Part shown: in pieces, positions 19,917-50,960 of the stretch | Position numbering within the stretch: position 1 is the first letter of the stretch | Layout: every line of letters begins with the position of its first letter | Notes under the pieces: model-generated | The model's input: only the letters and a program-made list of their open reading frames with translations | The model's database searches: none | What the model was told of the DNA's origin: nothing | Translations under genes and position numbers: made by a program | Assembly (NCBI GenBank): GCA_002269645.1 | Contig: NIVC01001425.1 | Coordinates: forward strand, 114,666 to 178,665 | DNA: 64,000 bases | DNA from: Macrostomum lignano | Taxonomy: Eukaryota | Reading direction: 5' to 3'

Positions 19917-19988
19917 GGGCCGTAGCCCAGTGGTCCAGCGCAGCTCTCTCGTGCTCTCATGGCCCAGGCTCGATTCCAATTGCAGTCG
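19917..19988 (+). other. tRNA-like head (tRNA pseudogene or SINE 5' part)
   Basis: A-box-like TAGCCCAGTGG (19923-19933) and imperfect B-box GGCTCGATTCC (19967-19977); no convincing cloverleaf. Confidence 0.35.
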
Positions 19989-20352
19989 AGCTTCTTCCCT
20001 TTCATTTTTAAGGACTAAAAGAACTAAGACAATGAAAACAGCCTGAGTGGGACAAGCAAATGGGGCCCCACTAGTTAATATTGAATTTTCAAAGATTTTG
20101 CTTGCAAAGTTGCTTTAATTAGATGACAAATCTGTCGCGGCGCTTGGAACTTTTTTTATTACACGAGCGTGATCGCTGCATTGCTATATTTTTCCTCTTT
20201 TTGTGCTTTGGTTTCAGCTCGTAGGGAGGGACTTGTCACAGGGGGAGCGAAGGGGGTTGACGGGGACAGTAGTGCAAGCGCGCGCGTCAAATTTCAGTCA
20301 ATTCTGCCTCGTTCATAGCCAATTAGGCTTTATTGCCGCAGTTGACTTTAGT

Positions 20353-20784
20353 TTAGGACTGCTCGATCGACTGCATCGGAAAGTCCTGCTGATCGGAGGG
20401 ACGCAGGCCGATGCTCGGATAGACCGGCTTATCAAAGCAGGCGTAGTGGCCGTTAGATGACTGCTGGCAGCACTCGGCGAACTTGTCCTGGTCGAACAGC
20501 GTCTCTGTCGATCGGCTGTGCGACATGAACTCGTACCAGGCGCACACCAGGCAGCTGTTGAATATGGCAGGACCGTGCTCCGGGTCGGCGCAGGCGCCAA
20601 CCATTTCCAGGCGGTTGACGCCGATGCCTGGCTTCGGTGTCGGCTGGGTGGCGGCGTCGATCGGGTACTGCGTAGGGAAGACGTCGTCATCGAAATACGG
20701 CAGCTTCAGGGAGGCGGCCGAGGTGCCGAAAACCAGGCCGGTAGCCAAAACGCCTAGGCAGGTCACTAGGCTTAGGTAGGACAT
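20353..20784 (-). CDS. Secreted cysteine-rich protein or prohormone-like precursor, 143 aa
   Basis: ATG start, hydrophobic signal peptide (~aa 1-23), acidic spacer, then C-x12-C-x2-C-x23-CC-x9-C; GC-rich codons against an AT-rich flank. Confidence 0.75.
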   Translation of the reverse strand: MSYLSLVTCLGVLATGLVFGTSAASLKLPYFDDDVFPTQYPIDAATQPTPKPGIGVNRLEMVGACADPEHGPAIFNSCLVCAWYEFMSHSRSTETLFDQDKFAECCQQSSNGHYACFDKPVYPSIGLRPSDQQDFPMQSIEQS

Positions 20785-22528
20785 TGTGCTTATCAGTTTG
20801 AATGTTAAAGAGACTTTTAGAAGTTCAAACTGCGCTCTGAAGTTTTGCTGCTGAGGCTGAGGAAGCAGACTTGTATTTATAGACTTTTCCCGTTTATCTG
20901 CCGCCTACCCGCTTCCCTACGCAAACAGGCGACAATTGGCTGCTCGATCATATTGGCTGTGCAAAAAAGACGCGGTTCGACTGCCGCGGTCTGACTTGGG
21001 GCGTTTCTGAGATCGGAAAGAAAGCAGAAAGAAGGAATCCTATCTGGCCCTTACTCAGAAATCCTGCCATTTTTCTGCTAGTATTTTAAGCAATTGTTTA
21101 TTATTGTACAAAACTGTTTGAATTAGAGTTTGAGCCCCATCTTACATGTGACTTCGTTGTGAATCGTTGATAAAAAAGTATCTGAATGCAAAAATCAGTT
21201 CGAAGGACTCGTAAAGGAAATCACGAGAGAATTGCGAAATAGTGAATCTCTGAAAGAAGGAATCCGAAAAGAAATTTAGAATTAAACTTGTGACTTAATA
21301 GAAAGTTTAGTATAGTTATTTTAGTATAATGGATTACCGCTATGAAATGAGTTGCACTTTCAACCCTAGCTTTACAGTTACCCATGACCACGGGCGTATG
21401 TTCTTTTGGTAAAATTTAAGTAATTATGCATTGCGTCATGCGAATGTCACGCAACATTGCTGCTCTAGATAGTGCCAAAAAACGAGCGAAAAAGAATATC
21501 GAGCAGCGTGACTCACGATCAGCCTCAGTTACAGCGCTTGTTAAGTTATAAAATATAAAAAATAATCGCCTGATACGAGGAGATTCTGTGTATGTAATCC
21601 ACGGCATGTGCGACTCTGGCGGATAATGGCTTATCTCGGCTATCCATGTCTATCCATCTCTTTGGTTTGTCTATGGTAGCAGAGTTACGCTACTGATTAT
21701 CAACGCTCATTTAACACTGGGGGAATAGACGAGGCGCACAGACAAAGTCGATTACGAGTACATTCAAATTTAAACAATGTTGTCTTTGGCCATGAAGTCG
21801 GCTTCAAGACTTTTTTCTTGATTCTCTTGACTACCGGTGGTTGGGATTGCTTGCTGGGAACAACCATGGACAAGATAGTCTATTTTCGAACATTCCATTC
21901 ATCTGTTGACGCAATGATTCCCGCGGAAAGGGTGGACACTGTTGCCGAGTATATTTAATCTTACATGTAGGCATCGCACAGCCTGCAGAAACTCCCGAAA
22001 GTTGTCTATGGCCGCAAAGATTAAAGTTACTTGTCTGTGTCTAAAGTATTGCCAGTTTGGAAAAGTTAGTGACAATATTATATGGAAAACACTGCGCCTC
22101 TGGACTCCTTGGAGTTTTTTATTCCGACGAAGAGAAGCACGAAGGAGTGCGACGCTTTAAGATGATCAAAAATGAAGACATTGGAAGAGAGCTGCTGCTA
22201 AGACTACAACATCGGATGTTGAAATTGTGTCCAACAATCCATCAGTCATAGAAGCCTAGTGGCTCCGGACGCCAATGAAAGCGACTCTGGCTGTGGATGC
22301 TTCAGACTGGCTCCCGAAGCCAAGGAAACGGCTCTGGTGCCTGTCGTTGGTCAATGGGTTGGAGTTTATGTTTCGGAACGCGCGTATGTGAATATTATAT
22401 TGCTATCATAGTCTATGAGCATTCCTTTTTGCCCCTCTCAGTCTCTTTTGCTCAAATAACCGAAGTGCTGTTAACAGATGAAGAAAAAATATATCGTATC
22501 ATTTTGTAGGTGTTTTTAGAGGTATACC

Positions 22529-23146
22529 CATAGATCTTATATTCCCTAGATAGGCCACTCTCAGTGCATTCAATAGGAAAAGACCGACCACGAAAATTGC
22601 AAGAAAAATAGAATTAAGCCGACAGCGTTTAAGACAAGTCTGAGGTCAGTAGCTTAAAGGGACATGACATATTTCTTTCGTGGTTACAAAAATATTCGCA
22701 ACAGACACAAAGTTCGCTGGTCCTCGCGTCCTTGCGCTTTGCTATCAAACAAATGGGCGGAAGAGCGCTGAATTCGAGGGCTGCCGTGTTCGGGGATGCA
22801 GCGCACATAGCTCGTAAATTGCCGCCACCAACAAGTAATGGAGTCAACATGTCGCTGCACAACTTCCCTAGGAGTGACTCTGCTGCCCAGAAGTGGATTG
22901 AATCGTTAAGCGGCCCTAAGTCGTCCTTTAAGTCATAGGAGTCAGGCATAGCCTTTTTTCGGAACAAGGACTACACGGACTGCAATTATGGCTTGCGCCT
23001 GCCGTCTAAATATACCTTTAAAAACCCCTAAGACGCACACAAGCTACTAACCTGATACCGTGGTCGCAAAATCTTCAAGAAAGACGAAGGCTCTATGGGT
23101 GTGCTTGTGGTCGTGAGTGGCTTATCTAGGGAATATAAGATCTATG
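22529..23146. mobile_element. P-element-like MITE (618 bp) with THAP-like fragment
   Basis: 32-bp TIR CATAGATCTTATATTCCCTAGATA(G/A)GCCACTC, flanked on both sides by GGTATACC. This is an 8-bp TSD, but it is palindromic and could be part of the TIR. The internal plus-strand frame has SLHNFPRSDSAAQKW (THAP-like). Confidence 0.7.
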
Positions 23147-23204
23147 GGTATACCAATCGAGCCTAATGTCTATGGCCAAACCACACCGAACAAAAAACTT
23201 TATT

Positions 23205-23470
23205 TAATACGACTTCAGCGTTTCGTCAAATTGTATAAGATCCATCTCATTGAGCAGGTCTCGATCCTGATCCAGATCCTGACCGAGTAAAATCTCGGGT
23301 TCGTTCACATCTAATTGAGCCAGATCGTCGAACATACTGAGCATGGTTGACTCGCGCTGAATACTCGTACGCTCGCCAATCTCAGCCGAGGAGGCGCCGC
23401 GACAACGTCTCCTTCTGACATGTGTAGTAGGCCAATTCGTTCACCAGATGCCGCGTCGTAGATCCCGACT
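23205..23470 (-). pseudogene. N-terminal fragment of a Crypton YR of the same lineage as the 26156 copy, inverted
   Basis: The minus strand translates (one frameshift) to IYDAASGERIGLLHMSEGDVV...AEIGERTSIQRE...DDLAQLD...LLNEMDLIQFD. This matches IYESSTGVPIGLLHMSQGDVV...TEISERIQRE...DDLAQLD...LLNEMDLMQFD at 26156. Confidence 0.8.
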
Positions 23471-23865
23471 ATGAGCTTTGGTATACACGATCGTTAAAAT
23501 TAAGACAATACTAGAATGAAAATACGGCTCGTAATTCCACTAAGGCCGCTCAACACCAAGTTTAGATCATAGATATTTCGAGCGTGCATTAATGGTTGGT
23601 TATTCGTAAGTGAGACTTTAGGATAATAGTCCGGCTCATGAGTGCGCGCCCGCATTGTCGAATTTCAGTGGGGCCATAGACAAAAAGGGCATCGAATGGA
23701 GAGAGGGGTTACCGAGGAGAGAGAGACATAAAGACTGAGGTGGTTTACTGGAGTTTGGGCCATAGACAACGAAGTTGCAAACAGGCTGGGGGTTAAGAGG
23801 GTGGAAAGGAAGGAGATGTGGAGAGAAAGAGAGAATAAAACGTAAATAGCTACATTCGCTTGGCC

Positions 23866-25398
23866 ATGGAGAACCAGACGTCATATCCGATCAACTGGGG
23901 CAATCTGCCTGTCGAAAGTTTAGCCAACGTATCTAGCAGCGAACTCAATTGGATCTCAAGACTTTCCACATCTCAGAAGGACATGAAGGATAACGAAGAC
24001 TTTTTGAACTTCTTGCACTTTCTTGAGAGCGGTGATACTGCCGATGATTTGCCTCTGCTACCGGCCGAGGATGATGCTCCAGCTGAAGAGGATGGAAAGA
24101 ATGAAACTGAGCCGAAACGAGTTCCTTTGGATATGCAAGAGGCAATGACAAAAGATGAAATAGTGAGCCTACCAACCAAGACGCGAGAGCAGATGATTGC
24201 TCATGGTAACGGTTTTGTGCAGTTCCTTCGCGAACATGGAGCTGCTGTTCATGAATTGAGTCGTGTTGAGATGTGTGAGTTTCTTAGGTATTACTACTAC
24301 CAATTGCGTCGCCATGATGGCGGTCCATACTCGCCTGCAAGTCTTGTGTGCATCCGCGCCGGGATACAGCGCTTTCTGACTATGGTGGCTGGATTAACGA
24401 TCAACATGATCGATGGTGAGGAATTCGTTCTAGCGAATAGAATGCTCCGAATGAAAGTCAGGGAATGGCACAACTCCGGCGGTCAGGTTCGATCATATCC
24501 GCCAATCGAGGAGGGTGATATGGAGAAGCTACGGACGTATTTCGACAGATCAAGTGCAGAGACCACTCAGGATGAGTTTCTATTTCGCGTTATGTACGGC
24601 CTAGGAGAACGAGGAAGGGAACATCTGGAGTCGATTGAATCCAAGAAGTGGTTGGTGAAGCGCGAAGACTCGGATGGAAGACCGTACTACGCATTGCCTG
24701 TACTGAATTCCAAAAACAAGTCTGCCGATCCCAATCGAGCCAAGCGTGACATCGACGTAAAGCAGGCGAGAATCTACGATGTTGGAATTGTGGACGACTA
24801 CATGGCTATATTACCAACGGATACGAAGAACGACTCATTGTTTCCCAGGCCACTGAAGAATGCAGGAGGCACCAGACGATTTTGCTCGAAGCAGAAACGA
24901 GGAATAAATTACCTGAGGACTTTCATGAAGGCGCTGAGCAAAAAAGCGAAGCTGTCTAAGGAATACACCAATCATAGCATTCGGTGAGTCAGTTGGTCGG
25001 GGAAGTGCATGTGATGTTTTCAACTTGTGTCTGATTGAGTCTAATTTACAGTTCAATTGCTCAATTGTTCTAGACTTAGCAGAGTGTGTGACCTGGAATC
25101 GGCTGGGCATTCGATGAGTGAGATCATGGCTATCACGGGTCAAAAGTCCGAGAGCACGGTCCGGCGCTACCTGGCAGTTAAACGGGACAAGTCCCTGCAA
25201 CAATGCAGCGATGCAGTGTCGCGTGCGTTGAACATGGGACAAAGCGCCGCGACCCACGGTCAAGTAACAATGCCTGCTGACATCAGCATCCAAAGTTCCA
25301 TCGTGCAAGAAGCAGTGAGCGTGTCTGATGGTCGTCAGATGAACGGTCGGAATATCTTTATTATGAACAACTGCACTTTCAACAATTGCAATCTGTAA
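23866..25398 (+). CDS. Crypton-type tyrosine recombinase YR1 (DUF3504/KCTD1-ZMYM-like), intact, 2 exons 23866-24983 and 25074-25398; 480 aa
   Basis: YYYQLRRHDGGPYSPASLVCIRAGIQRF, DMEKLRTYFDRS, GERGREHL, YTNHSIR|LSRVCDLESAGHS..IMAITGQKSESTVRRY. Intron CG|GTGAGT...TTCTAG|A restores the frame; C-terminal FNNCNL tail. Confidence 0.88.
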
Positions 25399-25813
25399 TG
25401 GTCTTCGGCACTATGACAATTGCGCCATATTGATACTGCACAATTAACTTTCCATAGCGCTAATCTTTTGTTGTTGGTGTTTGCTGTTTTGTTCTAAAAA
25501 TAGGCGTCCATTATCCCGAGTTTGAAATCATTATCCTGAAGTTAAAGTGAAAAAAATAAATAAATGTTCTCATGGTTTAACCATAGACGATTGCATTATC
25601 CTAAAGGCTGATTTTTGACATTCTTATTTGATCCAGCGTGCAAGAATGCTTTGGAAGTCGCCATATGCGTGCAGAAATGCATGTGTCTATGGTAAAAGCA
25701 CCTTGAATTTACATGTGCACTCCGTGCAGGAATGTCAATCGTGCAAGAATGTAATGCGCAATGTTTCTATATTAGCATAAGTCAGCGTGCTAGATTCCTC
25801 CAATGATGTAGTA

Positions 25814-25900
25814 ATAAATGGCTATGAGTGCACGAATGCATTTGAACGAGGGCGCGCAGCGCCCGAGTTCAAATCATTTGTGCACGATATAGCCATTTAT
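25814..25900. mobile_element. 87-bp palindromic MITE or hairpin with TA flanks
   Basis: ATAAATGGCTAT..GTGCAC..TTTGAAC-GAGGGCGCGCAGCGCCC-GAGTTCAAA..GTGCAC..ATAGCCATTTAT, with TA on both sides. Confidence 0.7.
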
Positions 25901-26155
25901 TAGTATTATTGTATGATTTTGGTGCCTTTGGATCATAGACATTTGTAGCGTGCAGCAATGATTGGAGCAACGACATTAAAAATAATACGTTTCTTGTCAG
26001 AGAGTGCACCAATGATGCATTGGTGCACGCTTGAAATATCTATGGTCAAAAGTGGGTTTTGAAAGTCTTTAAAGCCAGAAGCTGAAGCTACGAGCGTAAA
26101 TATGGTTTAGCTGCGTTTTATACTCCACTCATCTGCCGCTCCATTGAAACGAACC

Positions 26156-27633
26156 ATGATCTACGAGTCTTCTACTGGTGTGCCAATAGGTCTTCTGCAC
26201 ATGTCGCAGGGCGACGTTGTCGGCGCTTCTGCCACCGAGATTAGCGAGCGCATTCAACGCGAGGCGGTCAGGCAGGGCATGATTGATGATCTAGCCCAGC
26301 TGGATTGTGGCGCACTGGAGGAGCTTTTGTGCGGAGAGGATACAGAGCAAGCTCTTCTCAATGAAATGGATCTGATGCAGTTTGACAACACACCGAAATC
26401 CGTTCTGAAGCAAGAGCAATGGGCACTTCGAAAATTTCAAGAGGTGCTCTCAAACAAGAAATACTCCGTCAATCTCGAGACATCCAACAGTTGGTTACTG
26501 CTCTGCGCATATTCTACGCTTTTATGCGCAAGGTCGACGGTGGATACTATGCCCCTGCCTCTCTGGTTACTGCTCGCGCCGGTTTGTACCGCTATTTACT
26601 TCGCGTACGTGGATTAAACATACTTGAAGATCAACGTTTTGTGAAGGCCAACCTACAACTGAAAGCTACAGCTGCCAAGTTCATCCAGGAAGGTGGCTCG
26701 GTGAAGCAGTTTTGTGCAGTCGAGAAAGGAGACCTAGATAAATTGCGCGTCTACTTTGACAGGAGTACACCGGTAAAATTACAACAGGAAATGTACTTTG
26801 TGTTGGCATTTCACTTTGGACTGCGAGGTCGGGAATGGTTCCGTAAGCTGACGGTAGATTCCATTCAGAGATGTACAATCGATGGGCGACGCGCATTTAG
26901 ACTGGCACCTATGGAGACCAAAAATGTCCGTGGAAGTTTAGAGACGCGGACTTCAGAAGATCGAAAGCAGAGCGTGCTTGTTGAAACGTTTGAAAGCAGA
27001 TGTCCCTATGAGTGCGTGGATCCCTACCTGAAGAAGATCGAAGAGGCAAAGAGCAGAGAAGGGGTGCCAAGCTCTTTGCTGTTCCTACGTCCTAGATTGC
27101 GAGGGCTAGCCGACTCCTGGTATTTCGCTAAGCAGGTACTCGGCGTCAACACACTCGGAAACTTGATGCGTGTCATCTAAGAAGCGGCCACACTAAGCAA
27201 AGCCTATACTGGGCATTGTCTTCGAGTTACATTGGCAACCGAGTTGAATGCGGCTGGAATCTCCCTGTGGGATATCAGCGCAGTTACGGGACGCAAAAGC
27301 GAGAGCTCAGTAGAAAGGTACATTCGGCACAGCAGAAAGCGCGATGGGGAGATGGTTGCACTGTCGACAACAATCAGTTTCATCGGAGGGACTAAAATCG
27401 CTGCTACATAGTCGCCCGATGGAGCCCGGCGTGTGACTACGGTCGGCTCTGATGACTCCGAACTGGTACCAGCCGATACGCAGTTAGCGAACAGTGCACA
27501 GACAGCTGATACTGAGCAGCCAATAGCCGTCGTCGGGCGCAGTTTGGAGACGCAGCAGACGCTTGCTTCTGCGATTTCTGGTACTTTCTACAACTGCCAA
27601 TTTCACGTACTAATAATAAGCCATGAGGCATAA
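26156..27633 (+). pseudogene. Crypton-type tyrosine recombinase YR2, full length but inactivated
   Basis: FYAFMRKVDGGYYAPASLVTARAGLYRY, YFDRSTP, GLRGREW, YTGHCLR, TGRKSESSVERY, FYNCQF. One frameshift near 26490 and in-frame stops at 27178 (TAA) and 27409 (TAG); no intron in the catalytic region. Confidence 0.88.
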
Positions 27634-28337
27634 GAAATAGGTAACTGAGGCATACTGCCTTAACTGCTGTTCTGTCTATGCATTTTCGGGCAGAAATGAG
27701 ACGGAATTCGAGACCTCGGATTTCGCTCGTTCCTGCCCTCAAATCCATAGACAGAACCATTAGTTGCTTCTAATGTTGCTTTTATTGCTTGCGTTATACG
27801 TTATGCAGTGCTAAATATAGCTTTGAATATCTGGCCTCTTAGCGTTTGTTTCGGCCATAGACATTTGAATCGTGCAACAATCAGGCTTGATTGGTATACA
27901 TCTAAAAACCCCTCCAAAATGCAGTGCTGGGCAAGTTAATCAATTTTTTTAACTCGTTAAAAGTTAAAAAGTTAATTTAATTGCTCCAAAAAAATTAACT
28001 GTAACTAGTTAATTATTTAACTTTTGCCCAAAATTTAACTTCTGAAAAGTTAAAAGTTAAAGTTAATAATTCTCTAACGGAAAAAGTGACATTTTCCCGG
28101 ACATGCGTCCGGCGCGTTTTTTAAATTTCAGGTCGGCGCGGCGCGGCTGTGGCCAGGTCGCGGTGCGGCGCGGCGCGCGGTGGCGCGACGCAGCGCAGAA
28201 GGTCGTGCGGCGGCGCGGGAAGTCGCGCGGCGGCGCGACATGGCGCAGTATGGTGCACCGCGACAAGGAAATATCTATGCAGCGCGACGCGGAGCAGCGC
28301 AGCAGGGAAGGCAGAATTACAACTACATGTATACAAC

Positions 28338-29402
28338 TAGGGATGTCGACCCCGGGGAGGGCTCCCCGGGGCCCTGGGGAGCTTGTCGGGGAATACTCCC
28401 CGGGGAATTAGACCGGGGACCCCGGGGAGAAAAAAAGCATTTTTAACTAAATTTTTGCCATTTAAATAAGAAAATCATTCACAGAAAGCTGATTGAAACT
28501 CTGTCTATGCTTTTTTACCGCAAAACTGCTTATTTTAATGTATAAAACACAACACACGTTTGAATGGGGGGGTTCATAAGACCGAAATTTCACAACGCCG
28601 AAACACCATACTTCGCAAGACCGAAACTTCATAAGATCGAAATTTCACATCGTAGAAAACCTTACAATAAGGATTGTATTGCATGCAGAATTTTCGGCGT
28701 TGTGAAATTTCGGTCTTATGAAGTTTCGGTCTTGTGAAGGGTAGTGCTTTTCGGCGTTGTGAAATTTCGGTCTTATGAAAGCGACCCGTTTGAATGTTTT
28801 TTTTCACTATGAGTCTTTCAATCAAGCAAATTGAACGTACGAGCGTAGAAACCCGTCAGGAAAAAGAAGCCTTACTGACTATTGTGTTGGTCTGCGTTGA
28901 TGGCTTGACGCATTTGACGCAGGCACAGCGCTATATCCTGCGTCAGTCACTGACGCATAGGGGGTGTCATACAATAACAAAATACTCCGTATTAGACAGG
29001 ACAAAATGGTGATTTACATGTATCTGCAAGAAATTAAAATTCCGATTACAAAAACGGTCTCATTCATTAATTATCCTCCCTCGAGTGCAGCTGCTGAGTA
29101 TGCATTTTCCGCCTCCGGAGTCTGGACCCTTTCTGATAAAGGTGCGCGCACGATTTGGTGATGCCACGTTGTCAAATACAGTTTTAAACAAACATTGCCT
29201 TAAGTTTTTACCCTTGCGCCTTGAACATGTAGTCCATCCAAAGCTTTAATCAAAGTTTAAGAAATGCCACTTAGTGACTTAAGATCTAAGTTATCCGCCG
29301 TTTTTACTTATTTTTTCCCCGGAGTCCCCGGGGTCCCCGGGGAATGACAGTAAATTACCCGGGTCCCCGATAAGAAAATTCCCCGGGGAATCGACATCCC
29401 TA
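28338..29402. mobile_element. Non-autonomous hAT (Ac-like) element nested in the outer hAT
   Basis: 12-bp TIR TAGGGATGTCGA (Ac TIR begins TAGGGATG); 8-bp TSD TATACAAC/TGTACAAC with 1 mismatch; subterminal CCCCGGGG repeats. Confidence 0.85.
28566..28786. mobile_element. MuDR-like MITE (221 bp) nested in the inner hAT
   Basis: 31-bp perfect inverted repeat TTCATAAGACCGAAATTTCACAACGCCGAAA, GG termini, perfect 9-bp TSD CGTTTGAAT. Confidence 0.88.
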
Positions 29403-29819
29403 TGTACAACGATAACTTCTAGTAGTCCTTGGGTAGAATATCAATAGATAATAGTTGAAGATTCCAGAATCTTCCGAATATTCTATACATTATAACTTGT
29501 AACTGAAATAATATACATGTAATAGTTTGTGACGCGTTAAATAATGCTTAGAAAGGCGAAGTTATTTTACGTATGTATTAATTTTACTTTTTAATGGCAT
29601 ACAAGCTGTCGAAACCCGCGGATTTTGAACCCGGGGAACTCTATTTCCCGGAATTATTAACTTTTGTCATTTAACTTTAACTTACAGAAAAAAATTAACG
29701 ATTTTTGTTAACTAGTTAATACATAAAAAATTTAACGAAAATTTAACGATTTTTAAAAAAATTTAACTAGTTAATTAACTAGTTAAACAATTAACTAGTT
29801 AACGCCCAGCACTGCCAAA

Positions 29820-30365
29820 ATGATACAATGGAGAGACATCGATACTTGTGACGTTGAATATCTAGCTGAAAAGTTAAAGTACTTTTACGCTACACTTCGA
29901 AAGGAAGACAAGACCTTCTATGCACCAACTACGCTGATCTGTATTAGAGCCGGACTCTATCGCTATTTTTTGCGTTTTCGCCGGCTGAATATCATTGAGG
30001 ATATCGCTTTTACTCAAGCTAATTTGGCGTTAAAAGCCGTTGGCAGACTTTTTCTTAAAGCTGGCGGAAGGATCGAACATTTTGAGACAATTTGCAAGGA
30101 AGACCTGGAAAAGCTATCTAGCTATTTTGATCGGTCAACTCCAACTACTTCTGCACGAGGTGTACTTCGTACTCGTTTACTTTTTTGGTCAACGTAGACC
30201 CAAAAGTGGTCGTGCCTGTCACCAAGCTCGGACCTGCTTCGTCCAGTCAGCACCTTATGAATCAGGTGATCGACGTGGATTCCACCAACATAGAAGGGAA
30301 CCGTTCAGCGTTTTTGCTTAACTTCAATGGAACTTGAACAATGGCGTGTTCAATTTCAAGCCCTT
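29820..30365 (+). pseudogene. Crypton YR3 remnant; catalytic half deleted
   Basis: FYATLRKEDKTFYAPTTLICIRAGLYRYF, DLEKLSSYFDRSTP, (frameshift) LHEVYFVLVYFFGQR*, then directly a C-terminal-type tail (LNNGVFNF). Confidence 0.8.
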
Positions 30366-30939
30366 AGGATGCAACCTGACATCGTCAATGCTACCCAAAC
30401 TGAAAAAACTACTAAGTTTTGCCGACTCTCCGACACTTTATATCCCCGACACTTCACATCATTTGTTTTAGTAGTATTGCAGTTATATGTTTAAAATTCC
30501 TGTGGTTTTGACGTTAGATTACGGTATCAATTTCCAGTTCAACTTAAATAATAAGTATTCTAAAAATAGAAGCGTGCAGCAACGGGACGTTGCCTTGTCT
30601 ATGGTAAAAACATTCACTAATGCACTGCCAAATCGTTAGTCAATTGGGTATATTTCCGCACTCTAACGAGTGCTTTTTGCCATAGACGCACGAGTCAGAG
30701 TGTGGAAATTGCAGTGTTGTTGGGTTCATTCTTGCACACAGTAAGAGTAGTAGGAAGCAGGGGTCAAGGGAACGCAGTCACCTTGCGGGGGTGTGGGGGC
30801 GGAGCCCCCACTAATACGAGAGCATAGACATTTAAACCGAGACCAGTAATACGAGACCATAGACACTTAAACTAAAGGTAGAATCACGAGCCCGAGTTTC
30901 GTCGAAAGTTTTATTTCGTCAGATTTCAAAAAGGTTGAG

Positions 30940-31278
30940 CCATAGACATATGCATTCCTGCACTGTCGGGAAATTTACTTGCTAATTAGAGCTTTCCCTC
31001 CATGCAAATAATCACCAAATATCCACCTCAGTCATCTAACCCAATTTGAAATCGACATGGCTAGCATCATAGACCCAAATTTGTGCGCTCCATTAATTGA
31101 TTTGAACTACGTCACCGTGAGTGGAGTTTCGACGGACGCTGTAGCCGTTCTGTCTACAGAAAGCAAATTCGTATTGTATTCGTATTCGTTATTGTTCCGT
31201 TTCCTTTATAGTGCAAGAATCGCACATCATTCCTGCACTGATTTTTTGCTTGATTTCAATGGCGTTTTTACCATAGAC
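30940..31278 (+). mobile_element. Minimal non-autonomous Crypton-like unit between two direct CCATAGAC sites
   Basis: Contains ATG31057 MASIIDPNLCAPLIDLNYVTVSGVSTDAVAVLSTESK, homologous to the YR4 start (MAAIINSTIAPPLVDFNYCSVSGCTTEALAIVSTESK). It is joined to a right-end sequence that matches 50445-50520. Confidence 0.7.
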
Positions 31279-31675
31279 AGTTGCATTCCGGCACGCGAAC
31301 GAGTGCGGGAACGACATTCCTGCGCGCTGAACCCGACAACAATGATATATTCCTGCACGGTCACGAGTGCGGGAATGACATCTGCACGAGTGCGCGCTAG
31401 CGCACGAGTGCACGATGTCCTTTACGCACGAGTGAACGTGAAGGAGTTCCATTGTCGGATGATTCATCGTGCAGGAATGCACAAAACCGTGCAGGAATGC
31501 ATTTCTGCGCCTAATGCTTTTTCAGTGAGATTTTACCATAGACATCCATTCCTGCACGCAAAAGAGTGCAAGAATGCCATTCTTGCATGGAAAATCAGCC
31601 GACAATGCTTCATTGTCAACTTGGTTGGCTTTTTCTATCTGTGAGCAAGGGCTGCGTCTCCTGGCATGTCTATGG
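31271..31675. repeat. Array of GTGCA(G/A)GAATG / CATTCCTGCAC motifs bounded by CCATAGAC sites
   Basis: Multiple CGAGTGCGGGAA, GTGCAGGAATG and CCTGCACG copies; cores at 31271, 31536 and (inverted) 31668. Confidence 0.65.
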
Positions 31676-31735
31676 GCGGGACGAAATCTACTGTTGCCAA
31701 ATGGGAATTCTTAACTTGGCTGACGAAAGCAATTA

Positions 31736-31951
31736 CACCTTTTCACGTTCAATTTTGATCAAAGTCCAGTTCTAAAAAAACTAGCGGCAATTCAATTCAG
31801 ACAATTTAGACTGGGGCCCATTCTAACCTCAGTTCAAAACATTCTAACCGAAGTAAGGTTTAGCCATAGACAAAATTATCCTCAGTCTGAATTGAATTTC
31901 CGCTAGCTTTTTTAGAACTGGACTTTGATCAAAATTGAACGTAAAAGGGTG
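31736..31951. mobile_element. TIR MITE with TA target duplication (216 bp)
   Basis: ~65-bp inverted repeats CACCTTTTCACGTTCAATTTTGATCAAAGTCCAGTTCTAAAAAA.CTAGCGG.AATTCAATTCAGAC, TA on both sides; contains a CCATAGAC at 31864. Confidence 0.8.
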
Positions 31952-32139
31952 TACTACATAATTGCTATGCGAGTCGCCCGCCCGAAGTTGGCATTTCAAT
32001 AAGTGACTTCACTGAACGAAGACACAGCATTGTTGTAGCGTATCCAGATGCATTTGATTATGCGAACATAGGATCCTTGCATATTAGTTCACCTACTTTT
32101 ATATCTTTGAAAAGCAGCTTCTTTCACATATCCGGCACA

Positions 32140-32512
32140 TCATATCTCCGACACTTCATATCTCCGACACTTCACATCTCCGACACTTCACATCTCCGAC
32201 ACTTCACATCTCCAACACTTCCCAACTCCGACACATCATATCTCCGACACATCATATCTCCGACACTTCATATCTCCGACACTTCACATCTCCGACACTT
32301 CACATCTCCGACACTTCCCAACTCCGACACATCATATCTCCGACACATCATATCTCCGACACTTCACATCTCCAACACTTCATATCTCCGACTTCACATC
32401 TCCGACACTTCACAACTCCAACACTTCACATCTCCGACACTTCACATCTCCAACACTCCATATCTCCGACACTTTACATCTCCAACACTCCATATCTCCG
32501 ACACTTCACATC
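32140..32512. repeat. 16-bp tandem repeat (ATCTCCGACACTTCAC), probably the internal array of a MuDR-like MITE
   Basis: About 22 imperfect units. Downstream sequence ends GATATGAAAGCGCCCC (~32630), resembling the MuDR-MITE end ATGAAAGCGACC at 28786. Confidence 0.8.
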
Positions 32513-39912: not shown

Positions 39913-41602
39913 CACGCAGCCTCAGCCACTGAGCATTTTTCTCTCCCTTGCATATACTATATAGTGGCGCAATACTTCAATACTTTTAAAGTGCACTGGC
40001 TGATTTCGCTTTCTTATGCAAAAAAGCATGTTGTCGAATACTCCTATTTAATTATTTATAGCTCGTAGCATCAGCTCAGGAAGTTGAAGTTTAGTCTATG
40101 GCCATAAACGTATTATTTATTTTTCGAGCTCTCACTGCGAGAAAAATACACTAATTAGATAGGGAAAATACAGTTGTTCGAGTATTAAACCCCTTTAGCA
40201 ATGAGCCAGAGCTTAATAAAATTGCAGGTACCATCCCGGGCACATTTGACATCTTTTGGCGAAAAAACGGAGAAAATTGGTCAGGCCAATCGGCTTAAAA
40301 CGTGAACCCACGCTTCGGTGATTGTCTATGGCCAAAACTGTGCATTAAGGAGAGCACAAGGACAACTTGATAACAAAGGACCGGAAACGAGCCAATTCAT
40401 GGCGAAACAAGTATGAGGCTCGTTTAAAAGCATTGTTCTATGGCCCATCCAAAGCTACGAAAGCGAAGAAAGCTGAGCTAAAAATGGAGTTCTTCGCATG
40501 CACTTGCAATTGAGAGAGAGAACTTTTATTCTTGCTGAAACTAAATATCATGCCGAGAAAATGCAGCGTCATTTTCTGTTGTGCAAACTACAATAGTAAC
40601 CGTGATCGGAATGTTGCAGTATTTTCGTTTCCTAAGGATGCAACTGAACGAGAGGCTTGGCTGGCGACGGTAAGAATTTCTTCAAATGTGCTTTGTGAAT
40701 CAGATTTAGCCTGGCCACATGAATTCATTAACAATTTTGTTGTTGTTTTGACCGTGACAGACTACATGGGCGTGTGTGCTAAGCACTGGCCTCAAGATGC
40801 ACCAATGATAAAAAAGGGAAGAAATGAAAGGCCGCTCCACCGTCAGTTTTCGACGGAGTCCCGCAGTCCTGCCTCGTTCAAACACAAGGTTTGTGAAGTT
40901 CTACTGCTTTAATTCAAATATTCGAGCGTATTTGCACTCCATCAAACGAAACACTAAGATGCGTGCTTGGATATTGCAGTGCGTGCCAGTCGACAGGCTA
41001 AGGGAAGGGGCGTGCTGTTGTCCGAACGATGCCTTTTCCAAGATGAACTAGTAGAATTTCGAGAGCGTGACACGCTGCCATCGTGGACCGAATTCCGAGC
41101 ATCCATTCACTGTTCAGACGTCATCAAAGCACATCAGCTTATTGTTACCATTGTTCAAGAGGAGGTGTTTATCTTCTCGTTAAGCGCCAATGACGAAATG
41201 GTTCTGCGAGTTTTCGTTTCACCAAACTATTCCGTGCGATGCTTTCGGTTAAACTCACCAGTTGCGGTTCGAGATCTGCTTGGATTTCAACCAACATTAA
41301 AGTATTGGTCGCAACTTGAAGCTATCATAAATCGTTGTAAAAACTCTACAGTGGACGTCGAAAGTGAGGTGAGGACATTAGGCCGTATGAATAAATCAGC
41401 AAATGCTCTTGAGCAAATGCTCGCACTCTGAGCTGGAGCATTTTCTCGAGGCTGAGTAAATACTCAGAGTCAGAGCAAATGCAACAATTCAGTATGAATA
41501 AACAAAAAACTCAGACTCAGAGTAATTGCTCAACCGCTTGAGCAGCAGCCTGGCTGCTTAAAGCCATAGACAGGCAGAGCTGCAGCAGCAGCAAGAGAAG
41601 CG

Positions 41603-47519: not shown

Positions 47520-48762
47520 TCAACTGCAGTTGCTTGCCAGTTGAGTCAGCTAGGTAGCTGTCTCAACATTTTGTGAGCAATTGCTCCGATCTTTTGTCTA
47601 TGGCCATGTTTTTATTCTTACTGACTGGAGTAATTGCTCTGCAGCTGAGAATTTTCTCATGAGTCGGAGCAAATGCTCAACTTATTCTTATTGACCTGAG
47701 CATTTGCTTGAGTTTGAGCATTTGCTCAGTTTATTCATACGGCCTATTATCTAAGAACCTTTCTATTGCCTTTAACCACGATGGAGTTGTACCGGACACA
47801 TCGGTTACATTCATCCTGAAGCTGCTCGAGTTCGCCACAACGCACCCAAACAATCGACGATACGACATTGCCACTATGCGCCAATCTGCTTTGCTTTACC
47901 TGATTAGCAGTTCTGCACAGATAATGCACAGCATAGTAATAACATTTCAGGCTACATAACGCTTAAGGAGAAAATTGCCGGTGAAGATCCTGCCGAAAGT
48001 TTAAACACCCCACTCGGTTAATTCACTGAAATGATTTCCCGGGGAAAGTTGAAGCACCCGCCAAAGTGGCTGTTCAATTTTGCTTGCCTCTGTTTCGGAT
48101 GCTTCATTTCGCTGCGATCACCGTCATGTGCTTTGCGAGTCCGGAAATTGTTTCTTGCCGTTGGCGAGTTTTACTTCCCTGAAGCAGATGTTCTGGGATG
48201 CTGCGTGCGCCTCACCAACTGTTTCTTCAAGGGTTATGTTCAACGAGGAGCAAAGAGCGCTCCTTCGCCGGATAAAGTGCACGATAGAAAAATACTGAAG
48301 CTGAGTGGACAGTGAGCGAACCTGGAGCAAACACTTCACTATTTATCATAGTCAGCTCTTGTCCCGTTCTGTGACTGTTATTTTCCTCTCTGTTTGTAGT
48401 TCAGATGAAGAAAGAATCGTAAATTTTTCTCGAGTTTCCTTATACATGTGCTGCATGTACAGCCTTCCCATTGTGTATTTTCACGACGTTTACTTTATGT
48501 AATAAAACTATTCAACATTTAAAAAAACCGACCCTGCACCCGCCTTCTGACTGCCTATCAAAAAGTCAAATATGATACGAGTATACATTGGCAACTGAAA
48601 GCATGCGCATACGGATGGGCCATAGAACAATGCTTTTAAACGAGCCTCATACTTTTTTCGCCATGAATTGGCTCGTTTCCGGTTTCCCGTTTCCGGTCCT
48701 GAGTTATCAAGTTGTCCTTGGAGGGAGCTTAATTAATAGTTTCATAGCTTTAGAGCTGAGCC

Positions 48763-50305
48763 ATGGCTGCAATTATTAACTCCACCATAGCACCTCCACT
48801 AGTTGACTTCAACTACTGCTCTGTAAGTGGTTGTACAACGGAGGCGCTGGCAATTGTGTCAACGGAGAGCAAGCTGGAAAGAGAGAGCGAAGAAGTGCTG
48901 GCTTTGTCGTTAAGCATGCCCAACAGTACTGATGCGGAGCTGGAGCAGCTATTGGCTATCGAGCCGAGTCGCTGTGCAACCTGGACGAGCTTGAGGAACT
49001 GGCTCGGCAACTGGAACGAGATAACCAATGCAAGTCTAGTGTCGCGGAGGAAGAGGCGATTGTCCGGAGGTTCACGGCCTGATTGGCGGATAACAACCTC
49101 CGCTTAGACTACAAAGATGCTCCAGTGGAGGATGTGGCTAAGTACGTTCGCTATTTCTACGCTCACCAGCGGAAGGCGGATGGGGACGTTCTATTCCCCG
49201 AATACTATCGTTGGGATACGTGCCGCTCTTTTCCGCTACTTCATGAAGCTGCGTGGCCTCGACATCATTGCGGATCCAGCTTTTCATGCGGCTAACCTGA
49301 TGATCAAGTATGTCTGCAACGCTTTTTTGCAGAATGGTGGTCGGCACTACGGGGCCATAGAATCTGACGACTTGATCAAGCTTAGTGCATACTTCGACAG
49401 GGCAACACCGTCGCGACTTCAGGAGGAGGTGTACTTCAATCTGCTATACTACTTTGGCAATCGGGGCAGAGAGTGCTTCGTGGAATCACCATGCAGTCGT
49501 TCAGCCAGGTAAAACTGGCCAATGGGTCGTTTGAAATCAAGCTGCAGGGCGGTACATCAAAGAATGTGCATGGTTCCACCGACATGAGGGAGTGCGACGA
49601 CAACAAGGAAGCGATGATGGTGGCGACGTCAGTAGCTGCAAAATGTCTGGTTCGTGCTTTTCTGCTCTACAAAGCCAAGATCAACGACGTTCCCGGTCGG
49701 AACGGACGCGACGTTTTCCTGCGGCCAAAGTCTCGAGTCGGTCCAGACGGTGTGTGGTACACAAAGCAACCAGTCGGCGTCAACACTCTCGGGCCTCTGC
49801 TGAAAAAGATTTCTACCAATGCCCAGCTCTCCAGGGTGTACACCGCCCACTGCGTACGTCTGACGGTCGTTACCACTCTTCATGAATCCGGCTTTGCAAT
49901 CGAAACAATTGCGAAGGGCACAGGTCATAAGGTCAGCGCATTTTTCGTCCTTATTCTGCTCTAATTTTGATTCATGTCAGTCATGTCATACTGATACTAT
50001 CATTACCATATATTGTTTCGTAGTCGTCCACATCCGTGGAGCGCTACATCCGTCGCGGAAAGAAGAGAGAGACAATCATCGCAGGCATGAGCGGGCAACT
50101 GACGCGTGCCCTGACTGATAGTGACAACGTGCAGTTCGGAGGCAGTGAGACTGCTTTGGCACAGGTTTCTACTGGTAACCAGCCTGTCATCACAACAACG
50201 TCAAGCGCCGGCGCATCCACTGTGACGGTTTCTACTGCCTTAACGAAGCGCATGAAGATCGTAGCTAACGGCGAACGCAACGTGGTGGAGTTCACATTTG
50301 AGTGA
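48763..50305 (+). pseudogene. Crypton-type tyrosine recombinase YR4, frameshifted, with intron 49932-50023
   Basis: YFYAHQRKADG..YSPNTIVGIRAALFRYF, DLIKLSAYFDRATP, GNRGRE, YTAHCVR, KGTGHK|SSTSVERY (donor GTCAGC, acceptor TTTCGTAG); three or more frameshifts. Confidence 0.85.
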
Positions 50306-50539
50306 TATGTGATGCAGTCTACTACGCTCCGATATTGACTTCATGCTGACCTTAGCGTTACTTTTTTAAATTTATCGTCACTTTGCAATTTCATCCTTGT
50401 TCTACGTTTCACTATGTTTAAATACATTCGTTCCATGCCGCAGCATTCCTGCACTGATTTTTGTGTAGCCACAAGTGAAATTTTTCCATAGACAAAAGCA
50501 TTCCGGCACGCAAAGGCGTGCGGGAATGGCACTCTTGCA

Positions 50540-50960
50540 CGCTTCAATCAAACAACACTGAAGATTTCCAAACAGCTTCGCTTCATTATCGGAATACACC
50601 TATCGAACGCGAATTGCCAACACCATCTGAACTCCTCGCGGGAAGAAAGCTGAGATACAAGCTGGCATTACCGGTTGAAGACCTAATACTGAAGAGAAAA
50701 TAGATCATAGATGAAAAAAAATCTTGAAACTTTGAACGCCGTCAAGTAGAAAAATGCAATTTGCTACGCCCAAGGAGCAAAAGATCTACAACAACTGAAA
50801 CCAGGTCAACAAGTCTGGTTGTACGAAGACAAGCAACAATGGGTACCCGCGGAAGTGAAGGATCCAGATGACACTCATCCAGAACGCTCATACACTGTGC
50901 GTACCGCCATGGGAAAGCAATGCAGACAAAATAGACGCACAAGGACCAAGGACAACTGAT
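50540..50960 (+). mobile_element. Gypsy LTR-retrotransposon integrase C-terminal remnant
   Basis: HYRNTPI..TPSELLAGRKLR..; PGQQVW..WVPAEV..RSYTVRT in broken frames. Confidence 0.7.

What the first reader, a model, noticed from the sequence alone, without database searches (positions are those of the whole stretch)
23168..31675. Crypton island: several divergent tyrosine-recombinase lineages packed end-to-end in 8.5 kb
Seen, in order: an inverted N-terminal YR2-type fragment (23205-23470), intact YR1, decayed YR2, internally deleted YR3, and a YR4-type mini-unit (30940-31278). YR4 itself lies at 48763-50305. The proteins share only family motifs (Y.P..L...RAG..R, D+.KL..YFDR, G.RGRE, H..R, TG.KS...+.RY) and have unrelated N-termini and different intron states, so this is not a local tandem duplication. 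The units show no TSDs and are delimited by CCATAGAC-bearing modules. Established: Cryptons are eukaryotic YR DNA transposons thought to move via circular intermediates, and they gave rise to the KCTD1/ZMYM/QRICH1 domain. Inference: these elements integrate preferentially into or next to each other's end modules, building a cassette-like array reminiscent of a eukaryotic integron.
Basis: partly seen in the sequence, partly recalled or inferred. Interest (0 to 1): 0.85.

Follow-up and report, generated by a model that had tools for sequence, protein, structure and literature searches.

The report
Flatworm Crypton transposon pile-up
A 9-kb stretch of the flatworm Macrostomum lignano genome holds at least four distantly related Crypton (tyrosine-recombinase) transposons and many of their loose ends, and a sister copy of the locus lacks exactly two whole units, cut at their end sites, which suggests these elements are gained or lost at each other's ends.

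Summary
The window is Macrostomum lignano.

CCATAGAC is strongly over-represented (33 copies against 1.3 expected). It is not specific to the island: 18 copies lie elsewhere, in unrelated contexts.

The Crypton-specific marker is a 12-mer box, CGTGCANNAATG. 29 of its 30 hits lie in the island or in the YR4 tail. The box forms lox/FRT-like inverted-repeat sites, usually just 3' of CCATAGAC.

A sister haplotype (GenBank NIVC01001775.1) lacks 6.24 kb. The missing DNA is best described as two whole units, YR1 (2,420 bp) and YR2 (3,816 bp). The breakpoints lie inside terminal boxes, at termini that I defined independently by homology. A second 1.2-kb difference is an ordinary microhomology deletion.

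My reading is that Cryptons accumulate here through recombinase-mediated gain or loss at resident Crypton ends. The direction (insertion or excision) is unresolved, and genome-wide clustering could not be tested. The integron analogy is loose, because every unit carries its own recombinase. This is a new variant of a known kind and is moderately interesting.

The parts
22496..23594 (-). Mini-YR2: an internally deleted, non-autonomous element of YR2 type (5' 384 bp plus about 75 bp of 3' tail), split by a MITE. Its 5' terminus is box A, CGTGCATTAATG, at 23583-23594.
   Evidence: 23211-23594 matches 26400-26018 (62%). The tail rc(22496-22520) TCTAAAAACACCTACAAAATGATAC matches the YR2 tail.
22529..23146 (.). 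hAT-like MITE nested in the mini-YR2 tail. TIR is CATAGATCTTATATTCCC...; the 8-bp TSD GGTATACC lies at 22521-22528 and 23147-23154.
23589..26008 (+). Unit 1 (2,420 bp), absent from the sister haplotype. It is bounded by GTGCA of box A (23584-23588) and of box D (26004-26008). It holds YR1, an inverted right-end fragment of YR4 type, a palindrome and a micro-element.
23866..25398 (+). YR1 gene, intact. Exon 1 is 23866-24983, the intron is 24984-25073 (GT-AG, phase 2), and exon 2 is 25074-25398. It encodes 480 aa with RGRE, KN, HSIR, TGQKS and RRY.
   Evidence: It is 98% identical to eight M. lignano UniRef models.
23674..23767 (+). Two CCATAGAC cores 86 bp apart, lying 99-192 nt upstream of the YR1 ATG.
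25581..25614 (+). YR1 3' module: CCATAGAC-GAT-TGCATTATCCTAAAGG, 12 nt after AATAAA. The ATTATCCTAAAG part is inverted at 23608-23627.
   Evidence: (I19). L001 has the same TGCATTATC box.
25619..25753 (-). Inverted right-end fragment of YR4 type with four CGTGCA[AG][AG]AATG boxes and one core (25685). Its terminus abuts the YR1 tail.
25796..25916 (.). Palindrome (77%) built of box-bearing end sequences.
25911..25960 (-). Micro-element of YR2 type: a 34-nt left end (box C, 25949-25960) fused to the right tail CACCAAAATCATAC.
26004..26028 (.). lox-like site GTGCACCAATG-ATG-CATTGGTGCAC: 11-nt perfect inverted arms formed by box D and the YR2 left terminus.
26015..29830 (+). Unit 2 (3,816 bp, or 1,915 bp without the nested hAT-like element), absent from the sister haplotype. 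It is bounded by AATG at 26011-26014 and 29827-29830. The YR2 element runs 26018-29826 with a 33-nt TIR (27/33). Left terminus is CATTGGTGCACGC; right terminus is CCAAAATGATAC.
26156..27633 (+). Decayed YR2 coding region, with a frameshift near 26480 and an in-frame stop at 27178-27180.
27922..29814 (.). hAT-like non-autonomous element nested in the YR2 tail. TIR is CAGTGCTGGGC; the 8-bp TSD CCAAAATG lies at 27914-27921 and 29815-29822.
29832..30564 (+). Delta-YR3: 5'-truncated and lacking the catalytic core. It is present in both haplotypes.
30565..31775 (+). Block of end modules of YR4 type, absent from the sister haplotype through a TTCTAAA microhomology deletion. It contains the core-to-core mini-unit 30940-31278 and three 11-8-11 sites at 31284-31313, 31348-31377 and 31547-31576.
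31734..31953 (.). Palindromic MITE with 69-nt arms (94%) and a CCATAGAC in its loop. Its left arm is truncated in the sister haplotype.
48613..50561 (+). YR4 element, with a decayed ORF at 48763-50305. It has a 5' variant core GGCCATAGAAC at 48619, a 3' core at 50486 and an 11-8-11 site CATTCCGGCAC-GCAAAGGC-GTGCGGGAATG at 50499-50528. Three independent homology blocks end at 50560/50561.
40324..40450 (-). Isolated copy of the YR4 5' leader (79% to 48613-48742), running core to core.

Best explanation
The island is an accretion array of Crypton-type DNA transposons in Macrostomum lignano.

Contents: one apparently functional element (YR1), three decayed or deleted ones from other lineages, and at least six mini, micro or solo end fragments.

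End modules: each unit ends in a module made of the shared 8-mer CCATAGAC followed by lineage-specific recombinase-type sites.
- In the YR2 and YR4 lineages these sites are built from the 12-mer CGTGCANNAATG, arranged as inverted repeats around a short spacer. This is the architecture of lox, FRT and att core sites.
- The YR1 lineage uses a TGCATTATC box instead.

Proposed mechanism (inferred): a circular Crypton copy is joined to, or cut from, the chromosome by its tyrosine recombinase. A resident Crypton terminus already supplies a strong half-site, so resident ends are the preferred partners. Units therefore pile up end to end and can also be lost as whole units.

Shown:
- the anatomy of the island;
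- the Crypton specificity of the box;
- a sister haplotype that lacks exactly the YR1 unit and the YR2 unit, with breakpoints inside the boxes.

Inferred:
- that the recombinase made those joints;
- the direction of the events;
- any role for CCATAGAC as an accessory or crossover site.
For: 1. YR identity. The catalytic motifs are conserved. Pfam gives Phage_integrase E=3e-4, and DUF3504 E=2.5e-6 and 3.5e-6. PDB XerA matches at E=0.003. Homologue P0006 carries both domains.

2. Box specificity. The 12-mer box has 30 hits against 5.3 expected, and 29 of them lie in the island or the YR4 tail. Four 11-8-11 sites were found, and an 11-3-11 site lies at 26004-26028.

3. Sister haplotype. NIVC01001775.1 is 98.5% identical to 13781-23595 (99.85% in the gene-bearing part, about 2% divergent in 20000-23595). 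It lacks 23596-29831.
- The left breakpoint is the 5' terminus of mini-YR2.
- The right breakpoint is the YR2 right terminus.
- Both termini were defined independently, by YR2/mini-YR2 homology.
- Removing unit 1 (GTGCA to GTGCA) and unit 2 (AATG to AATG) reproduces the sister junction with 1 mismatch. A single deletion leaves 3 mismatches.

4. Termini abut directly: mini-YR2 5' end against unit 1; YR1 tail against a YR4-type right terminus at 25618/25619; box D against the YR2 left end.

5. Many internally deleted units retain only their ends: mini-YR2, the micro-element at 25911-25960, YR4-mini and 40324-40450. This is as expected if the ends are the cis-acting parts.

6. L001, a 43%-identical relative, is flanked by a 10-bp direct repeat GTCTATGGTA. 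L002 has two cores upstream of its ORF. TATGG termini are already known for CryptonS (PMC3212892).

7. Five of the six YR pieces fall within 7.8 kb (P=0.005 under a uniform model).
Against: - Direction is unknown. The sister haplotype is only 0.15-2% divergent, yet the missing block contains a decayed YR2 with a nested hAT element. That favours loss from the sister copy over recent insertion here.
- The second difference between the haplotypes (30565-31775) is an ordinary 7-bp microhomology deletion. Such deletions therefore do occur at this locus.
- The TT/CC difference that favours the two-step model could be a single tandem substitution.
- The unit 1 crossover maps inside the box arm (GTGCA), not in a spacer. 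That is atypical for tyrosine recombinases.
- Delta-YR3 is truncated inside its coding region, so not every joint lies at an end module.
- hAT MITEs, a LINE, Harbingers and satellites show the region is a general sink for transposable elements.
- Counting lineages only (3 of 4 within 5.4 kb), the clustering is not significant (P=0.07).
- No other M. lignano copies of these elements could be fetched. Termini for YR1 and the genome-wide clustering are therefore untested.
Confidence: 0.55

Rival explanations
1. Passive transposon graveyard. Unrelated Crypton copies, like the hAT MITEs, LINE and Harbingers nearby, accumulated by untargeted insertion in a gene-poor, recombination-tolerant stretch. 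The haplotype differences are ordinary microhomology-mediated deletions that happen to end in short repeated end sequences.
For: - The window is rich in repeats. It has satellites, a LINE and two Harbingers, and two nested hAT-like MITEs.
- The 1.2-kb difference is clearly a microhomology deletion.
- The 6.24-kb difference is flanked by AATGG, which would serve as 5-bp microhomology.
- Lineage-level clustering gives only P=0.07.
Against: - Both breakpoints of the 6.24-kb difference coincide to the base with Crypton termini defined independently by homology. The rough chance of this is about 1e-5 to 1e-4, given about 10 termini in 9 kb.
- Three further terminus-to-terminus abutments exist within the island.
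- The one-step deletion leaves 3 mismatches in 16 nt, where about 0.3 are expected.
Confidence: 0.25
2. CCATAGAC is not a recombination site. It is a general M. lignano regulatory or boundary motif (promoter-proximal or polyadenylation-proximal, or the binding site of a host factor) that Cryptons and other transposons carry. The recombination sites would then be only the lineage-specific boxes. This reading is compatible with the main explanation.
For: - 18 of the 33 copies lie outside Crypton DNA and have no box and no YR remnant nearby.
- The exact 8-mer occurs 33 times, while the commonest one-mismatch variant occurs only 6 times. That looks like maintenance rather than decay.
- The motif lies 77-140 nt upstream of the ATG of YR1, YR4-mini, YR4 (variant) and the Harbinger transposase.
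- It lies 12-15 nt after AATAAA in YR1 and L001.
- The mapped breakpoints lie in the box, not in the core.
Against: - None of the four host genes in the window has a core in the same orientation within about 270 nt upstream of its ATG. The one exception, upstream of the PTP ORF at 14732, is ambiguous: 14461 lies 271 nt upstream in the gene's orientation, and 14713 is 12 nt upstream but inverted.
- Orientation relative to the YR gene differs between lineages: + in YR1 and YR4, - in YR2, L001 and L002.
- The core contains TATGG, the terminal direct repeat of CryptonS.
- L001 is flanked by a direct repeat of the core.
- Homology blocks of YR4 type begin and end at cores.
Confidence: 0.3
3. Local tandem or segmental duplication of one ancestral Crypton, followed by divergence in place.
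For: All four main units share the + orientation. YR2 and mini-YR2 are relatives lying 3 kb apart.
Against: - Identity is only 30-54% at the protein level.
- The N-termini are unrelated.
- Intron positions differ.
- The end boxes differ.
- YR1 has 98%-identical copies elsewhere in the genome.
Confidence: 0.03

Closest known systems
Crypton DNA transposons (Goodwin 2003; Kojima & Jurka 2011, PMC3212892), the animal CryptonA / DUF3504-related group
   Same: - Each is a single-gene element encoding only a tyrosine recombinase, with no RT and no DDE transposase.
- Each has a DUF3504/QRICH1-like N-terminal region plus a catalytic domain.
- Introns are present.
- Non-autonomous deletion derivatives outnumber autonomous copies.
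- Short direct repeats occur at the ends. The core contains TATGG, the terminal repeat of CryptonS.
   Different: - Animal Cryptons were reported to have neither direct nor inverted terminal repeats (PMC3212892, section 8). Here the YR2 lineage has a 33-nt TIR.
- The YR2 and YR4 lineages share a 12-mer box arranged as lox-like inverted repeats.
- An 8-mer core is shared across three lineages.
- End-to-end arrays and whole-unit haplotype differences have not been described, as far as the searched literature shows (one search found no paper on Macrostomum Cryptons).
DIRS-1 of Dictyostelium (a tyrosine-recombinase retrotransposon)
   Same: It is a YR-encoding eukaryotic element that preferentially inserts into existing copies of itself and builds dense clusters (PMC5633606, citing Cappello 1984). 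A circular intermediate is proposed.
   Different: - DIRS-1 has RT/RNase H and inverted LTRs and amplifies through RNA.
- It targets its own copies without apparent sequence preference.
- Here there is no RT, several divergent lineages share the array, and the joints lie at defined end sites.
Tandem accretion of integrative elements at a shared att site in bacteria (ICE/IME/CIME arrays; CTX-RS1 arrays at dif). This comparison rests on my own knowledge.
   Same: Each unit carries, or once carried, its own recombinase. New units recombine with the att-like site at the border of a resident unit. This gives unit-site-unit-site arrays whose members can leave singly or together.
   Different: Those systems are bacterial, anchored at a conserved host gene (a tRNA gene or dif), and experimentally proven. 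This case is eukaryotic, has no host anchor gene, and is untested.
Integrons
   Same: An array of units separated by recombination sites that contain imperfect inverted repeats.
   Different: An integron has one fixed integrase gene with attI and a promoter, and promoterless cassettes each with a single-strand-folded attC. None of these features is present here.

Membership tests
Crypton (YR DNA transposon) | Encodes a tyrosine recombinase with the catalytic R...K...H-x-x-R...(H/W)...Y residues | tested here: met
   YR1 has RGRE, KN, HSIR and RRY. The penultimate His is Gln (TGQKS) in the YR1, L001 and L002 lineage, and His in YR4, P0006 and P0007. Pfam PF00589 E=3e-4, below the gathering score. 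PDB XerA E=0.003. UniRef names the 98%-identical proteins 'Tyr recombinase domain-containing'.
Crypton (YR DNA transposon) | No reverse transcriptase and no DDE transposase within the unit (separates Cryptons from DIRS/Ngaro/VIPER and Tec) | tested here: met
   Each unit is 1.9-2.4 kb with a single ORF. The only RT and DDE domains in the window are the LINE at 41.7-45.3 kb and the Harbingers at 46.5 and 55.5 kb.
Crypton (YR DNA transposon) | Relatedness to the animal Crypton / DUF3504 clade | tested here: inconclusive
   DUF3504 E=2.5e-6 (YR2) and 3.5e-6 (YR4), and QRICH1 domain E=0.008-0.04. All are below the gathering scores. Homologue P0006 (E=8e-16 to YR1) passes DUF3504 and PF00589. No phylogeny with named CryptonA/I/S/F sequences was built.
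Crypton (YR DNA transposon) | Short (4-6 bp) terminal direct repeats as recombination substrates; no long TIRs or LTRs | tested here: inconclusive
   Short direct repeats are present: CAATG around unit 2, GTGCA around unit 1, and GTCTATGGTA in L001. However, the YR2 lineage has a 33-nt imperfect TIR. This departs from the published description.
Crypton (YR DNA transposon) | Moves through an excised circular intermediate | not testable with these tools
   This needs circle-junction PCR or sequencing, or an excision assay.
Integron | One integrase gene with an adjacent attI and a cassette promoter | tested here: not met
   Every unit carries its own YR gene, and the units belong to different lineages. 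There is no common upstream platform.
Integron | Promoterless gene cassettes, each ending in an attC site | tested here: not met
   The units are transposons or their end fragments. No cargo genes are present.
DIRS-like YR retrotransposon | RT/RNase H ORF, inverted or split LTRs, and an internal complementary region | tested here: not met
   There is no RT in or next to any unit.

The most novel reading that the evidence does not exclude
M. lignano Cryptons form a natural animal site-specific recombination system. Several diverged recombinase lineages share a common 16-bp landing or accessory site (GTTTTnR-CCATAGAC-A) that is scattered through the genome about once every 2 kb. Each lineage pairs this site with its own lox-like core site. 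Units are integrated into and excised from each other's ends. The 83-86-bp spacing of cores would reflect the geometry or minimal loop of the recombination complex. If this is right, the scattered solitary cores are functional or former docking sites, and the family offers new recombinase and site pairs that work in animal chromatin.
Probability: 0.15. Interest if true: 0.8.

Novelty: new variant of a known kind. Interest (0 to 1): 0.55.

Why it matters
How Cryptons move is still inferred by analogy. No animal Crypton has defined ends, a defined recombination site or a demonstrated target.

This locus offers three things toward that:
- Concrete candidate sites: a 12-mer box arranged as 11-8-11 or 11-3-11 inverted repeats, next to a shared 8-mer.
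- An apparently intact recombinase (YR1) with near-identical copies elsewhere in the genome.
- A natural pair of alleles, with and without whole units.

Excision, integration and binding can therefore be tested directly in a transgenic-ready model flatworm, or in plasmid assays.

If end-targeted accretion is real, it explains how a cut-and-paste YR element limits damage to its host, and it parallels DIRS-1 and bacterial island accretion. Separately, the window-wide CCATAGAC motif is an unexplained, sharply conserved genomic signal that deserves a genome-wide look.

Tried and rejected
- Fetching other genomic copies of YR1. P0002, the window's 375-aa YR1 ORF (23860-24987) and the window's Harbinger ORF are not on record. 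YR1 termini therefore rest only on internal inverted repeats and on the neighbouring fragment.
- Looking for further paralogous loci. The 70-aa PTP ORF returned only the same contig. The last homology search, with the exon at 34726-35373(-), found nothing.
- Distant relatives. L004, L005 and L007 (27-44% identity, from metagenomes) carry no CCATAGAC, and L004 and L005 carry no 12-mer box either (L007 was not scanned for it). The core is therefore not a universal Crypton feature. L004's flanks are also too short to judge.
- Literature. No paper links CCATAGAC or GTCTATGG to Macrostomum. The M. lignano genome paper describes no promoter motif, and its supplements hold no sequences to scan. No paper on Cryptons in Macrostomum was found.
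- ncRNA explanations for the motif. There were no Rfam hits and no tRNAs in the window.
- The idea that solitary cores mark decayed Crypton arrays. The six-frame HMM search found no YR remnants near them.
- Comparing the two Harbinger upstream regions to see whether cores are small insertions. One alignment (67% identity) hints at 9-11-bp insertions. The other is too diverged to use. I left this open.
- A local tandem-duplication origin. Rejected on divergence.
- My first reading of the 30565-31775 difference as a Crypton insertion. Rejected because the sister copy lacks the outer part of a palindromic MITE arm.

Full report
**Source and context.**
The window is eukaryotic and almost certainly Macrostomum lignano. 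The YR1 protein is 98% identical to eight UniRef 'Tyr recombinase domain-containing' proteins of that species. A host RRM gene in the window matches BOX15_Mlig019633g2.

The window mixes several kinds of sequence:
- Host genes: Memo-like, a PTP fragment, an RRM/RG-rich gene, and a two-exon gene on the minus strand.
- Large satellites.
- A LINE and two Harbinger/PIF copies.
- hAT-like MITEs.
- The Cryptons.

**Checking the observation.**
The pieces are:
- 23210-23463 (-): N-terminus of YR2 type.
- 23860-25395: YR1.
- 26144-27408: YR2.
- 29799-30318: YR3.
- 31057-31170: N-terminus of YR4 type.
- 48763-50302: YR4.

The lineages share 30-54% identity, and their N-termini do not cross-match.

YR1 is intact. 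It encodes 480 aa with a 90-nt GT-AG intron after HSIR. That intron position is shared with a 48%-identical relative (L002) and is confirmed by UniRef model P0009. YR2 has a frameshift and a stop. YR3 lacks its N-terminus and its catalytic core. YR4 has at least three frame breaks.

Family assignment rests on four things:
- The catalytic motifs.
- Sub-threshold Pfam hits: PF00589 at 3e-4, DUF3504 at 2.5e-6 and 3.5e-6, and the QRICH1 domain.
- A PDB hit to XerA.
- Homologue P0006, which passes both domains.

No unit contains an RT or a DDE transposase. The elements are therefore Crypton-type.

**CCATAGAC.**
The 8-mer occurs 33 times against 1.33 expected. The island holds 15 of them (P=9e-6). 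The other 18 are spread over the window in unrelated contexts, with no YR remnants nearby.

The motif extends to GTTTTnR-CCATAGAC-A. The exact 8-mer (33 copies) is far commoner than any one-mismatch variant (at most 6 copies), so it is maintained rather than simply decaying. It is therefore not a marker of the island.

Two independent short contigs that encode relatives of YR1 also carry it:
- L001 has a 10-bp direct repeat GTCTATGGTA on either side of the ORF.
- L002 has two copies 90 bp apart upstream of the ORF.

More distant relatives from metagenomes do not carry it.

The reverse complement contains TATGG. That is the terminal direct repeat reported for most CryptonS elements (PMC3212892).

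**The Crypton-specific sites.**
Downstream of many island cores lies a 12-mer, CGTGCANNAATG. Allowing one mismatch, it has 30 hits against 5.3 expected, and 29 of these lie in the island or in the YR4 3' end. None accompanies a core outside Crypton DNA.

- In the YR4 lineage the box forms CATTCCKGCAC-N8-GTGCRRGAAYG. This is an 11-8-11 inverted repeat, the architecture of lox/FRT-type core sites. There are four copies. Three of them lie 3-5 nt after a CCATAGAC (31271, 31536, 50486).
- In the YR2 lineage the box is the last 12 nt of a 33-nt imperfect TIR (27/33). At 26004-26028 two boxes face each other as GTGCACCAATG-ATG-CATTGGTGCAC.
- The YR1, L001 and L002 lineage lacks the 12-mer. It pairs the core with a TGCATTATC box instead.

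**Unit boundaries.**
Paralogues within the window fix several termini.
- The inverted 'fragment' is an internally deleted element of YR2 type. It has 384 bp of 5' end and about 75 bp of 3' tail. The tail is interrupted by a MITE with an 8-bp TSD.
- Comparing it with YR2 gives the family termini |CATTNNTGCACGC... and ...CCAAAATSATAC|. It also shows that YR2 itself carries a nested hAT-like element (27922-29814, TSD CCAAAATG).
- A 50-bp micro-element (25911-25960) has just these two termini.
- Three independent homology blocks of YR4 type end at 50560/50561. One of them is inverted and abuts the YR1 tail at 25618/25619.
- The YR4 5' leader recurs at 40324-40450, running from core to core.

**The sister haplotype.**
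GenBank contig NIVC01001775.1 (L003/L006) is collinear with window 13781-23595 at 98.5% identity overall. Identity is 99.85% over the genes, and divergence is about 2% in the repeat-rich part.

After 23595 the contig jumps to 29832, and after 30564 it jumps to 31776.

The second gap is a deletion in the sister copy. It is flanked by TTCTAAA, and it removes the outer 36 nt of one arm of a palindromic MITE that is complete in the window.

The first gap (6.24 kb) behaves differently.
- Its left edge is the 5' terminus of mini-YR2.
- Its right edge is the YR2 right terminus.
- Both termini were defined independently of this comparison.
- A single AATGG-to-AATGG deletion predicts the sister junction with 3 mismatches in 16 nt.
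- Removing two units predicts it with 1 mismatch. These units are 23589-26008, between the GTGCA of two boxes that match at 12/15 positions, and 26015-29830, between two AATG.
- Each unit contains exactly one YR gene.

Whichever way the events ran, they were whole-unit changes with joints inside the end boxes. The small divergence between the haplotypes, together with the decayed state of YR2 and its nested hAT, favours loss from the sister copy. Insertion of already-defective units mobilised in trans is not excluded.

**Interpretation.**
The best reading is accretion and trimming of Crypton units by tyrosine-recombinase action at resident Crypton ends. A resident terminal box is a ready-made half-site, so circles recombine there. 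The result is unit-site-unit arrays with many ends-only derivatives.

It moves the active site from CCATAGAC to the box, and it replaces the integron analogy with closer parallels: DIRS-1 self-targeting (PMC5633606) and bacterial tandem accretion of integrative elements.

Weak points:
- The direction of the events is unresolved.
- The unit 1 crossover maps in a box arm rather than in a spacer.
- One joint (mini-YR2 against Delta-YR3) lies inside coding sequence.
- A genuine microhomology deletion sits next door.
- There is no genome-wide test.

**What CCATAGAC is remains open.**
For a Crypton role:
- It is present at both ends of units of three lineages.
- It contains TATGG.
- It forms the direct repeat around L001.
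- Homology blocks begin and end at it.

For a general regulatory or boundary role:
- More than half the copies are solitary.
- It lies 77-140 nt before the ATG of YR1, YR4-mini, YR4 and a Harbinger.
- It lies 12-15 nt after AATAAA in YR1 and L001.
- Its orientation relative to the gene is not fixed.

Three of the core spacings are 83, 83 and 86 bp (90 bp in L002). After allowing for any spacing bin, P is about 0.007. This hints at a protein-imposed geometry.

**Verdict.**
The elements belong to a known class (Cryptons) but show features not reported for animal Cryptons: TIR and lox-like end modules, multi-lineage end-to-end arrays, and whole-unit allelic differences. I rate this a new variant of a known kind, with interest 0.55.

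Noticed in passing
Whole window, for example 1029, 14461, 14713, 19786, 21669, 22004, 40094, 47596, 53437, 58314, 60013, 60176, 62672: Solitary copies of GTTTTnR-CCATAGAC-A in unrelated contexts, about one per 3 kb outside the island. The exact 8-mer is far commoner than any one-mismatch variant. Orientation runs in blocks: five consecutive minus-strand copies lie between 53.4 and 62.7 kb. The function is unknown.
   Followed up: partly
23674/23760, 30597/30680, 30857/30940; L002 60/150: Neighbouring cores recur at 83, 83 and 86 bp (90 bp in L002), although the sequence between them is unrelated. The spacing is about eight helical turns and close to the minimal loop known for Cre (the Cre figure is from my own knowledge).
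   Followed up: partly
32123-32512 and 30427-30460; L003 10814-11777: The 16-bp satellite TTCACATCTCCGACAC has about 24 copies here and about 60 in the sister haplotype. A 34-bp piece of it sits inside the Delta-YR3 tail in the window only.
   Followed up: no
4796-5230, 5651-6734, 7297-8813, 9171-13124, 37788-39918: Five long satellites with strong strand composition skew, together about 15% of the window. One is a 16-bp unit repeated 248 times. Some create long spurious ORFs.
   Followed up: no
41757-45287; 46461-47519 (-); 55475-56065 (-); 41340-41560: A frame-broken LINE (endonuclease, RT, RNase H, zf-RVT). An apparently intact 352-aa Harbinger/PIF transposase ORF and a second, decayed copy. 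Harbinger-type GAGCAAATGCTC subterminal repeats also lie just upstream of the LINE. In the 67% alignment of the two Harbinger-type leaders, each CCATAGAC looks like a 9-11-bp insertion relative to the other copy.
   Followed up: partly
22529-23146 and 27922-29814: Two unrelated hAT-like non-autonomous elements with 8-bp TSDs, both inserted into the 3' tails of YR2-type Cryptons. The first has a TIR starting CATAGATC, which together with its TSD reads CCATAGAT.
   Followed up: partly
31734-31953: A 220-bp palindromic MITE (69-nt arms, 94%) with a CCATAGAC in its loop. Its left arm is truncated in the sister haplotype.
   Followed up: yes
23849-23866; UniRef models P0009 and P0014: An AG acceptor lies 17 nt before the YR1 ATG. 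Two M. lignano gene models splice unrelated upstream exons onto 98%-identical YR1 copies at this point. YR1 copies therefore also lie within or next to genes elsewhere, and YR1 may be trans-spliced or exonised.
   Followed up: no
YR1 C-terminus 25360-25395; Delta-YR3 about 30320-30370: A C-terminal NCxFNF motif is conserved in YR1, P0003, P0006, P0007 and L002. It survives even in the gutted YR3, which hints at a functional tail that published accounts of animal Cryptons do not describe.
   Followed up: no
14647-14658 (-), between cores 14461 and 14713: This is the only 12-mer box hit outside the island and the YR4 tail. It lies between a convergent pair of cores 252 bp apart, just upstream of the PTP ORF. 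It may be an old Crypton end.
   Followed up: no
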